A DNA stretch of 64,000 bases, from contig JAWQFM010000001.1 of the NCBI GenBank assembly GCA_033442325.1, positions 1,734,138 to 1,798,137 on the forward strand, read 5' to 3'. The notes beneath the pieces were generated by a model. The model was not told the DNA's origin and did not search any database. It saw only the letters and a program-made list of their open reading frames with translations. The DNA comes from Salpingoeca rosetta. Lineage: Eukaryota; Protista; Choanoflagellata. The translations under genes were made by a program, and so were the position numbers. Positions within the stretch are counted from its first letter, which is position 1, and the number at the start of each line of letters is the position of its first letter. Positions 13,157-37,907 of this stretch are shown here, piece after piece.

Positions 13157-20390
<7,234 letters not shown>

Positions 20391-20566: not shown

Positions 20567-20970
20567 GTGTGCACCTATTCCCCACCCCCATCCCCCACAA
20601 TACACACACACATCTCTCCCCTGTCACCCTCAAGTGTCGCAGTTCGGATTGACCTGCTCTGCGAGTTTAGACCTGTTCGTGTCGCCACCCCACTCCCATC
20701 ATGGGTGCTGTCTTTGCGCTTGTTCCGTCCACAAGCTTGTATTGCTTTTTGTGTTTTGAGCGCTGCTGCAGCTCAAGAAGAAAAGACAATGGCAAAACCA
20801 CCACAAGACAACGGCAACGGTAGCGACAGATGCGCACGCCTGCACGTGTTCAGCAGAGGAAAGCCGTGCATGGGACGAGAGGGAAGAAAGCAGGCGACAC
20901 TGTGTGGGGAGAGGTGGCGTGGAAGACCAACCTTGACAAAGACAGAATGGGTGAATTGAGGTTCGGAGGC

Positions 20971-21051
20971 GACAATCGCAACCATTCATCAGGCAAAAAG
21001 AACCATGGCAGCCGTTAAGCTTTCGCCATGTGCCATCACAACTTGTCTGTC
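20971..21051 (-). promoter_or_regulatory. SECIS element (type II-like) in the GPx 3'UTR
   Basis: Minus-strand RNA: GACAGACAAGUU-GUGAU-GGCACAUGGCG-AAA-GCUUAACGGC-UGCCAUG-GUUCUUUU-UGCC-UGAU-GAAUGG-UUGCGAUUGUC. It has a [AG]UGA..GA core, 11-bp helix II, unpaired AAA and an apical ministem, ~330 nt downstream of the stop of a gene with in-frame UGA. Confidence 0.75.
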
Positions 21052-21381: not shown

Positions 21382-22941
<1,560 letters not shown>

Positions 22942-36787: not shown

Positions 36788-37907
36788 TACCTGTGGGTAG
36801 AGGATGACGAGGTTGTTGGTTTCGGCGTACTCGTTGAGACCGTTGTGGACGACAAACTCCTCGCCAATGGTGCCAATGTCCTGGTTGCAGCCATGGAAGG
36901 TGACAACGAGACGGCACTTGGTGCCGCTGGAGCACTGGCGCGGAATGTACGCAAACCCGGCCTCGCCAAAGCTGATGTGGCCGGGGCTACCGGTCTTGAC
37001 ATACTGGGACTGCTCGAAGCGCAGCATGTTGCCGGGAACAAAGGTGCCTGCGGGCTTGATGTTGCCGTCGTAGATGTGGTTGAGGAAGTCGCCCACGGCG
37101 TCGAAGCTGCAGTTGTTGATGTACGGGTCGCCCAGGAAGTCGCACGAGTGGCCATACGTGGTGGTGATCCAGGCGTGCTCCGCAGGGTAGCTGTCGATGT
37201 ACTTGATGTTGCTGGTGTTGTTCACGAAGCGCTCGTAGAACTCCTTTGTCTTCTCAACAACGCCGGACTTGACAACCGTGTCGCGCTTGCCCGTCCAGAT
37301 CCAGACCTTGTCCCCGCTCATGTTGGAGGTGTCGTCGATGGCGTTGAGTGTTGCCGCGGTCTTTGCGGCCTGGACCAGCTTGTCCACCTGGATCAGCATG
37401 GGCTCCTTCATGCAGTTCATCAGGGCGGCTTCCATGTTGGCGTGGGCGCAGTCGTACGGTGGGCCGGCAAAGATGGCCGCCCCCACAAGGTTCGAGCTGT
37501 GCGCAACATGGAACTGGGATGCAAACGCTCCACCAGCACTGATGCCTGGCCAGTGAAAAAAAGAAAAAAGAAAAAAAAAAAGCAGGTGGGCGGTGGATGT
37601 GAACGCGCGCGTAGATGTGAACGCGCGCGTGAATGAGAACGCGCGCGTGAATGAGAACGCGCGAAGATGTGAGCACACGCACGAGCACACGAGCACACGC
37701 ACGAGCACAAACACAAGCGCGCACAAAGCACACACACAAAGCACACACGAAGCGTACACAAGCAGGACGCTGCACTTTTTCGCTTTGTGGCTCACCAGCA
37801 ACAGAGATGGCGTCAATGTCGATGTTCAGGCGAGGGAGAGGATCGGCAAGAGCTGCAGTGCTGCCCACTGCCAGCACACACGCAATCGCAAACCACTGGC
37901 CACTCAT
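35985..37907 (-). CDS. Secreted poly(3-hydroxybutyrate) depolymerase-like esterase (type II catalytic domain)
   Basis: Exons 37907-37796, 37545-36791, 36487-36438, 36096-35985. Signal peptide; lipase box G|ISAGG; AGPPYDCA; GKRDTVV (Asp); AEHAW (His); YINNCSFD; CRLVVTFHGCNQ; YAETNNLVILYPQ; NPQGCFDWWGY..Y..K.GPQ. Confidence 0.9.

What the first reader, a model, noticed from the sequence alone, without database searches (positions are those of the whole stretch)
20971..21051. Atypical SECIS: GUGA core and an 8-nt one-sided bulge in helix II
The core is GUGAU/UGAU rather than AUGA. Helix II is GGCA+CAUGGCG paired with UGCCAUG+UGCC, interrupted by unpaired GUUCUUUU on the 3' strand; AAA and a GC/GC ministem cap it. 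The 5' strand keeps 11 nt between core and AAA, as expected. Standard covariance models may miss this variant.
Basis: partly seen in the sequence, partly recalled or inferred. Interest (0 to 1): 0.7.

Follow-up and report, generated by a model that had tools for sequence, protein, structure and literature searches.

The report
Bulged SECIS of a choanoflagellate GPx
This is very probably the real RNA signal that lets a Salpingoeca rosetta glutathione peroxidase mRNA read UGA as selenocysteine. Its GUGA core is normal for this species, and the only odd feature is an 8-base one-sided bulge in its main stem.

Summary
On the minus strand at 21039-20988 lie a GUGAU/UGAU kink-turn quartet, a 4-bp lower stem, an 8-nt 3'-side bulge (21003-20996), a 6-7-bp upper stem, unpaired AAA and a ministem.

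The element sits 343 nt after the stop of a four-exon glutathione peroxidase gene whose catalytic codon is TGA (22701-22699). Stranded RNA-seq covers it; the mRNA ends near 20726.

It is the only such candidate in the 3'UTR, in 128 kb of window (both strands), and in 2000 shuffles.

All 11 orthologues examined keep the TGA. The ten with enough 3'UTR each carry a SECIS. The closest one (75% identical protein) shares the 5' half at 96% identity in an otherwise unalignable UTR.

The "atypical GUGA" reading fails:
- All four other S. rosetta SECIS I verified (MsrA, PRXL2C, SelK, TrxR) start GUGAUG.
- The published consensus already allows A or G at that position.

The bulge is genuinely unusual. 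Asymmetry is +8 here against at most 2 in 13 comparators, and larger still in the closest orthologue.

Rfam misses this element, but it misses nearly all choanoflagellate SECIS, bulged or not.

Earlier notes of this scan had flagged the gene and other GUGA-type SECIS in this genome. Function remains untested.

The parts
21035..21039 (-). 5' side of the SECIS core: G + UGAU (R-UGA-N)
   Evidence: Sequence read. The same GUGAUG occurs in four other S. rosetta SECIS.
21031..21034 (-). Helix II lower stem, 5' strand (GGCA). Pairs with 20992-20995.
   Evidence: MFE of the inner region, pair probability about 0.75. The first two pairs are purine-pyrimidine, as SBP2 prefers (PMC1874613).
21025..21030 (-). 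Helix II upper stem, 5' strand (CAUGGC). Pairs with 21004-21009.
21021..21024 (-). G + AAA: the conserved apical AAR motif, 12 nt after UGA
   Evidence: The spacing is the most common value among the 14 comparators (8 of 14).
21010..21021 (-). Ministem (helix III) and apical loop UAAC, making this a type II layout
   Evidence: The ministem is kept in L044.
21004..21009 (-). Helix II upper stem, 3' strand (GCCAUG)
20996..21003 (-). 8-nt unpaired bulge GUUCUUUU on the 3' strand of helix II, the atypical feature
   Evidence: The bulge letters read the same in all RNA reads, with no indel or splice.
20992..20995 (-). Helix II lower stem, 3' strand (UGCC)
   Evidence: L044 has UGCU here, so G-C becomes G-U and the pair is kept.
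20988..20991 (-). 3' side of the SECIS core: UGAU (K-G-A-W)
   Evidence: Fits UGAN/KGAW (PMC3753652, PMC2647825).
20726..21381 (-). 3'UTR of the GPx mRNA, ending at a poly(A) site near 20726
   Evidence: Stranded RNA-seq depth, poly-T loose ends at 20726, and a transcript contig spanning 20718-21723.
22699..22701 (-). In-frame TGA (Sec codon) at the GPx catalytic position, 1 nt before the exon-1 donor
   Evidence: The TGA is conserved in 11 orthologues.
21382..22941 (-). GPx gene. Exons: 22941-22698, 22514-22423, 22292-22253, 21722-21382.
   Evidence: My reading. Pfam GSHPx matches exons 1 and 2. The exon 3/4 junction is seen in reads. Exons 2-4 equal PTSG_00411.

Best explanation
The element at 21039-20988 (minus strand) is the functional type II SECIS of a Salpingoeca rosetta selenocysteine glutathione peroxidase mRNA.

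Inferred mechanism:
- The GUGAU/UGAU quartet, with the four Watson-Crick pairs stacked on it (GGCA/UGCC), forms the kink-turn platform bound by SBP2.
- The uninterrupted 11-nt 5' strand of helix II keeps the usual distance to the unpaired AAA motif.
- The complex recruits eEFSec with Sec-tRNA, so that UGA at 22701-22699 is read as Sec.
- The 8 extra nucleotides on the 3' strand loop out above the SBP2 platform. They are tolerated, and perhaps lower efficiency.

Shown here: the sequence anatomy, its presence in the mature mRNA, the catalytic in-frame UGA, orthologue conservation, and the tRNA-Sec gene.

Inferred: SBP2 binding, actual recoding, and any effect of the bulge.
For: 1. Host gene. Exons 1 and 2 match Pfam GSHPx on either side of the TGA. 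All 11 orthologue contigs keep TGA in the same NVASF-TGA-G context.

2. Position. The element starts 343 nt after the stop and lies inside the mRNA. Stranded depth is about 55-300 reads across it. The poly(A) site is at about 20726. There are no variants, indels or splices in the UTR.

3. Uniqueness. It is the only quartet-plus-helix candidate with an AA motif in the UTR. It is the only descriptor hit in about 430 kb of S. rosetta sequence, and appears in 0 of 2000 shuffles.

4. Conservation. Each of the ten orthologues with enough UTR has one SECIS there. Against L044, the closest orthologue, the only significant UTR similarity is 27 nt at 96% identity over the SECIS 5' half (E = 5e-8). The block U-run + UGCY + UGAY is also kept.

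5. Species style. The same UGUGAUG ... AA ... YGAUG pattern occurs in the MsrA, PRXL2C, SelK and TrxR SECIS.

6. Independent model. A covariance model built only from three non-rosetta orthologue SECIS ranks this site second in the window (15.7 bits, E about 0.03).

7. Machinery. A tRNA-Sec gene with a UCA anticodon scores 67 bits.

8. Fit to SBP2 rules. A U.U pair tops the G.A tandem, followed by purine-pyrimidine Watson-Crick pairs (PMC1874613).
Against: - There is no functional test.
- No Rfam SECIS model matches, even at E <= 10 on 141 nt. The control shows Rfam is insensitive here.
- The 101-nt fold is no more stable than shuffles (z = 0.04).
- Helix I is weak in the immediate flanks.
- The orthologue-trained model aligns the 3' strand in an alternative register that lacks the 3' GA.
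- In L044 the equivalent lower stem is thermodynamically disfavoured (probability about 0.05) and its upper stem has two mismatches. So there is no compensatory covariation for the bulged fold, only one G-C to G-U change.
- SECISearch3 discards candidates with too much one-sided insertion in helix 2 (PMC3753652). Mismatches in helix 2 lower recoding efficiency in human SECIS (PMC2761289).
Confidence: 0.85

Rival explanations
1. It is a decaying or very weak SECIS. The element descends from a SECIS, but the 3'-strand insertion has crippled it. UGA then mostly terminates, and the gene is on its way to losing Sec or function.
For: - Large asymmetry occurs only here and, worse, in L044.
- L044's fold is unstable and mismatched.
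- Helix 2 irregularities reduce efficiency in human SECIS (PMC2761289).
- The public annotation treats the UGA as a stop.
Against: - The TGA and both flanking coding parts are conserved in 11 lineages.
- The mRNA is well expressed and reaches past the element.
- The SECIS 5' half and 3' core are the only conserved islands of the UTR, which argues for purifying selection.
- The inner fold energy of -14.0 kcal/mol is mid-range among 15 SECIS.
Confidence: 0.08
2. The element works, but not in the drawn fold. Two versions are possible. In one, helix II adopts the register-shifted 10-bp form (GG/UC plus a 2x2 loop). In the other, the U-run 21000-20996 pairs with GAAAG 21024-21020 and masks the AAR motif, acting as a switch.
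For: - The orthologue-trained model chose the shifted register.
- CUUUU is complementary to GAAAG, and the U-run is conserved in L044 (my reading).
Against: - The shifted register leaves no 3' GA next to the helix, so no quartet can form.
- RNAfold prefers the bulged fold (probability about 0.75).
- The loop-to-bulge pairing would be a pseudoknot with a 0-nt and a 3-nt connecting loop, which looks sterically strained (inference).
- The AAR motif must be unpaired in known SECIS.
Confidence: 0.05
3. It is a chance hairpin, and the true SECIS lies elsewhere or there is none.
For: No Rfam hit. z = 0.04 for the 101-nt fold.
Against: - 0 of 2000 shuffles give such an element, and no other hit appears in about 430 kb.
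- The homologous element in L044 is 96% identical over 27 nt.
- There is no alternative candidate in the UTR.
Confidence: 0.02

Closest known systems
Canonical eukaryotic type II SECIS (consensus of SECISaln / SECISearch3)
   Same: - UGAN/KGAW quartet with R before it.
- G and Y at the first helix II pair.
- Helix II 5' strand of 11 nt.
- Unpaired AAR motif and ministem.
- Location in the 3'UTR.
(PMC2647825, PMC3753652)
   Different: - Helix II has 10-11 bp, at the low end of the published 11-16 bp range.
- It is interrupted by an 8-nt bulge on the 3' strand only. SECISearch3 filters against this kind of asymmetry as "bending".
- Helix I is poorly defined.
Other S. rosetta SECIS: MsrA (C1:2354188-2354232), PRXL2C (C11:1730404-1730455), SelK (C3:1395075-1395128), TrxR (C3: about 739546-739593)
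   Same: - Identical UGUGAUG 5' core and YGAUG 3' core.
- AA motif at 12-14 nt.
- Ministem.
- Inner fold energy of -13.6 to -16.8 kcal/mol, against -14.0 here.

   Different: Their helix II asymmetry is 0 to 2 nt. Here it is 8 nt.
SECIS of the closest GPx orthologue (L044:820-878, metatranscriptome contig, protein 75% identical)
   Same: - Same 5' half (27 nt at 96% identity).
- Same 4-bp lower stem (one G-C to G-U change).
- Same U-run before the lower stem.
- Same site of discontinuity on the 3' strand.

   Different: - Its 3'-strand insert is about 17-20 nt and may form a small extra hairpin.
- Its upper stem is weaker.
- Its 3' core is UGAC.
C. elegans thioredoxin reductase SECIS (G instead of A before the quartet; Buettner et al. 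1999, cited in PMC2647825)
   Same: It is cited as the exception to the unpaired A before UGAN. That it reads GUGA is from my memory, not from a text read here.
   Different: It is a single exception in its genome, as far as I recall. In S. rosetta, GUGA was found in 5 of 5 SECIS examined.
Kink-turn motifs bound by L7Ae-family proteins (U4 snRNA, box C/D)
   Same: Tandem sheared G.A/A.G pairs with a U.U on top and Watson-Crick pairs beyond (PMC1874613).
   Different: A SECIS has a large internal loop, a long helix II and the AAR motif. The binding partner is SBP2.

Membership tests
Eukaryotic SECIS element | Lies in the 3'UTR of an mRNA with an in-frame UGA at a position where homologues have Sec or Cys | tested here: met
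   The TGA sits at the GPx catalytic position. The element is 343 nt after the stop and inside the RNA-seq-defined UTR.
Eukaryotic SECIS element | Quartet UGAN/KGAW able to form tandem G.A/A.G pairs, preceded by R | tested here: met
   G-UGAU at 21039-21035 and UGAU at 20991-20988. Consensus taken from PMC2647825 and PMC3753652.
Eukaryotic SECIS element | Watson-Crick pairs stacked directly on the quartet (at least 2, purine-pyrimidine first) | tested here: met
   G-C, G-C, C-G, A-U. Rule taken from PMC1874613.
Eukaryotic SECIS element | Unpaired AAR (or CC) motif at a fixed distance on the 5' strand | tested here: met
   AAA at 21023-21021, 12 nt after UGA. This is the most common value among comparators.
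Eukaryotic SECIS element | Helix II of 11-16 bp | tested here: inconclusive
Range taken from PMC2647825.
Eukaryotic SECIS element | Typical but not defining (a predictor's filter): little difference in insertions between the two sides of helix II | tested here: not met
   Asymmetry is +8 here, against -2 to +1 in 13 comparators. The filter is described in PMC3753652, but its threshold was not available to me.
Eukaryotic SECIS element | Conserved at the same place in orthologous mRNAs | tested here: met
   Ten orthologue UTRs each carry a SECIS. The L044 element is sequence-homologous.
Eukaryotic SECIS element | Binds SBP2 and directs UGA recoding | not testable with these tools
   Needs a reporter assay, 75Se labelling or a binding assay.
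Type II SECIS | Additional ministem (helix III) above the AAR motif | tested here: met
   AGCU/GGCU with loop UAAC, or alternatively GC/GC.
Rfam RF00031 SECIS_1 (and SECIS_2-5) | Score at or above the gathering threshold (35 bits for RF00031) | tested here: not met
   No match even at E <= 10. In the control, PRXL2C, SelK, TrxR, L044, L045 and L049 are also missed. MsrA scores 25 bits and L048 29.5 bits.

The most novel reading that the evidence does not exclude
The interruption of helix II on the 3' strand, just above a 4-bp SBP2 platform, is a conserved and functional feature of this GPx lineage: 8 nt here, about 17-20 nt in the nearest relative, always preceded by a U-run. It would show that SECIS function needs only the quartet, a short lower stem and the 5'-strand ruler to the AAR motif. 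The U-rich bulge could tune efficiency, bind a factor, or transiently mask the AAR motif by pairing CUUUU with GAAAG. Together with the all-GUGA usage in S. rosetta, this would define a lineage-specific SECIS style that current predictors reject.
Probability: 0.2. Interest if true: 0.5.

Novelty: new variant of a known kind. Interest (0 to 1): 0.33.

Why it matters
- It completes the case that PTSG_00411 is the truncated tail of a selenoprotein GPx. The gene now has a transcribed, conserved SECIS.
- It gives a natural example of a SECIS with a large one-sided bulge in helix II. Prediction pipelines are built to discard this geometry, so selenoproteins may be under-called in choanoflagellates and other protists.
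- S. rosetta SECIS use GUGA throughout the five examined. Rfam misses almost all of them, and the genome does carry tRNA-Sec. These points are useful for re-annotating the selenoproteome of a model relative of animals.
- The biology itself, a SECIS serving a Sec-GPx, is ordinary.

Tried and rejected
- **Rfam scans.** I scanned 7 kb and then only 141 nt around the site. No SECIS model hit.
- **RF00031 over the whole genome.** It found only the two MsrA-type copies, at 25 bits.
- **Metagenome scan with P0001.** This was meant to find close relatives. It was swamped by bacterial GPx at about 30% identity through the generic NQFGHQEP word and gave nothing useful.
- **Look-up of P0003, the second-closest orthologue.** It is not on record. 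P0004 is listed from EukProt only and was not looked up. So the bulge could be compared with only one close relative.
- **MAFFT alignment of the SECIS set.** It could not align the 3' strands. I therefore seeded a covariance model from one sequence (R1) and then from three (R2).
  - R2 finds the site but in a wrong 3' register.
  - R2 over the whole genome gave one weak hit inside a GC-rich stretch whose nature I did not check.
  - I did not build a third model.
- **ARAGORN on the tRNA-Sec locus.** It found nothing. Infernal found the gene.
- **Pfam Rdx and AIRS_C searches of the genome.** No match, so SelW/T/H and SPS2 SECIS were not examined.
- I repeated it with coordinates only.
- **Spliced model.** I never joined the exons or read them through the TGA.

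Full report
**Organism and host gene**

The window is G000:C1:1734138-1798137 of a 55.4-Mb genome. A protein search with exon 4 returns PTSG_00411 of Salpingoeca rosetta at 100% identity, so the organism is this choanoflagellate.

On the minus strand I read a four-exon gene. Its exons are 22941-22698, 22514-22423, 22292-22253 and 21722-21382.
- Exon 1 ends ...NVASF-TGA-G, one base before a GT donor.
- Exons 1 and 2 match Pfam GSHPx at profile positions 6-31 and 36-63, on either side of the catalytic residue.
- I searched the exons separately by reference and did not join them.
- The public 153-residue model starts after the TGA.

**The element itself**

Coordinates are in the parts list.

- energy of -14.0 kcal/mol;
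- 4 bp, then an 8-nt 3' bulge, then 6 bp;
- G-A-A unpaired;
- a 4-bp ministem with a UAAC loop;
- probability about 0.75 for the lower stem.

The same helix II survives in the unconstrained fold of 131 nt. It does not survive in the 101-nt slice, whose energy is no better than shuffles. Helix I is weak in the immediate flanks.

**Is it more than chance?**

In the 991 nt after the stop, only four pairs of UGA...GA sites have at least 3 bp stacked on them. Only this one has the AA motif and a sensible span.

A stricter descriptor finds this site alone in three backgrounds:
- both strands of the 64-kb window;
- about 300 kb of other S. rosetta loci;
- 2000 dinucleotide shuffles of the UTR (0 hits).

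The thresholds were set after seeing the element, and the descriptor is too strict to catch the other genuine SECIS. It therefore shows specificity, not sensitivity.

**Is it in the mRNA?**

Three stranded RNA-seq runs cover 21730 down to about 20726 on the strand expected for a minus-strand transcript.
- Depth over the element is about 55-300 reads.
- Poly-T loose ends, which correspond to poly(A), lie at 20726.
- There are no variant letters, indels or splice joints in the UTR.
- A 1388-nt transcript contig spans 20718-21723 and runs on into exon 3.

The bulge is not an intron or an assembly error.

**Orthologues**

Seventeen relatives at 59-75% identity all have ORFs of 148-163 residues, consistent with truncation at the same place.

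In the 11 contigs I fetched, the in-frame TGA in the NVASF-TGA-G context is conserved. One contig (L056) has only 45 nt of UTR. Each of the other ten has one SECIS in its 3'UTR: three with GUGA and seven with AUGA.

Against the closest orthologue (L044, 75% identical):
- The only significant similarity between the two UTRs is 27 nt at 96% identity. It starts 4 nt before GUGA and covers the SECIS 5' half (E = 5e-8).
- On the 3' side, the block U-run + UGCY + UGAY is also kept.
- L044 is interrupted at the same point of the 3' strand, by a longer insert of about 17-20 nt that may form a small hairpin.
- Its lower stem is thermodynamically weak there.
- The only change within a pair is G-C to G-U. 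There is conservation, but no compensatory proof of the bulged fold.

**Is GUGA atypical?**

No. I verified four other S. rosetta SECIS behind genes with an in-frame TGA:

| Gene | Evidence for the gene |
|---|---|
| MsrA | PMSR match with one TGA inside |
| PRXL2C-like redoxin | AhpC-TSA_2; U-x-x-C motif |
| SelK | C-terminus G-G-U-G-R |
| Thioredoxin reductase | C-terminus G-C-U-G |

All four begin UGUGAUG and end YGAUG. A whole-genome pattern built on this style is about ten-fold enriched over its control (36 against 3).

The literature consensus has R before the quartet, with only UGA/GA invariant (PMC2647825). The core is given as UGAN/KGAW (PMC3753652).

**Is the bulge atypical?**

Yes. 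I counted unpaired bases on the two sides of helix II in 15 SECIS folded the same way:
- 13 comparators lie between -2 and +1;
- this element is +8;
- L044 is larger still.

The 5'-strand distance from UGA to AA is 12, the most common value. The inner fold energy is mid-range.

SECISearch3 discards candidates with too much "bending", defined as exactly this asymmetry (PMC3753652). Irregular helix 2 lowers efficiency in human SECIS (PMC2761289). SBP2 needs the non-Watson-Crick triplet plus at least two Watson-Crick pairs, purine-pyrimidine first (PMC1874613). The 4-bp lower stem provides these.

**Covariance models**

No Rfam family matches, even on 141 nt at E <= 10. As a control, Rfam also misses the PRXL2C, SelK, TrxR, L044, L045 and L049 elements. 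It gives only sub-threshold scores to MsrA (25 bits) and L048 (29.5 bits). The miss therefore says little about this variant.

A model built from three non-rosetta orthologue SECIS scores the site at 15.7 bits (E about 0.03, second in the window). But it aligns the 3' strand in a register without the 3' GA.

**Machinery**

A tRNA-Sec gene with a UCA anticodon is present at C34:611578-611663 (67 bits against a 47-bit threshold).

**Verdict**

This is a genuine but untested SECIS of a Sec-GPx. Its core is ordinary for the species. Its 8-nt one-sided bulge is unusual and is shared, in larger form, with the nearest known relative. The confidence that it is the functional SECIS is about 0.85.

Noticed in passing
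G000:C34:611578-611663 (+), = L043:1501-1586: S. rosetta has a tRNA-Sec gene (Rfam RF01852, 67.1 bits, anticodon UCA). ARAGORN misses it. A 2018 paper (PMC6188563) reported that no tRNA-Sec gene was found in either choanoflagellate genome.
   Followed up: yes
G000:C1:2354188-2354232, C11:1730404-1730455, C3:1395075-1395128, C3:~739546-739593: All four other S. rosetta SECIS examined (MsrA, PRXL2C, SelK, TrxR) share the core UGUGAUG...YGAUG. With the GPx that makes GUGA 5 of 5, whereas seven of ten orthologue SECIS from other choanoflagellates use AUGA. Rfam SECIS models miss nearly all of them.
   Followed up: partly
G000:C1:2346669-2346713 (-), L001/L014: A second, identical copy of the MsrA SECIS lies 7.5 kb from the MsrA gene. 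It is preceded by about 139-bp tandem repeats, with no PMSR match reported nearby. It may be a duplicated 3' end.
   Followed up: no
G000:C17:394367-394829 (+), L004:2399-3144: Another GPx gene has an in-frame TGA at the catalytic site. I found no SECIS candidate in the 745 nt after its stop, which hold long (CA)n runs. The signal may lie further downstream.
   Followed up: partly
window 20714-20750: The 3' ends of the minus-strand GPx mRNA and the convergent plus-strand DEAH-box helicase mRNA (stop at 20390) meet here. Reads of both orientations overlap over about 30 nt.
   Followed up: no
window 21024-21020 and 21000-20996 (minus strand): The U-run of the bulge (CUUUU) is complementary to GAAAG, which contains the AAR motif. 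The U-run is conserved in L044. This could be coincidence, or it could allow transient masking of the motif.
   Followed up: no
window 37614-37654 (+): A GC-rich 8-bp hairpin flanked by GUGAA and UGAA scored 17.6 bits with my orthologue-trained SECIS model. It has a 10-nt loop and no helix long enough for a SECIS, so it is probably chance.
   Followed up: no
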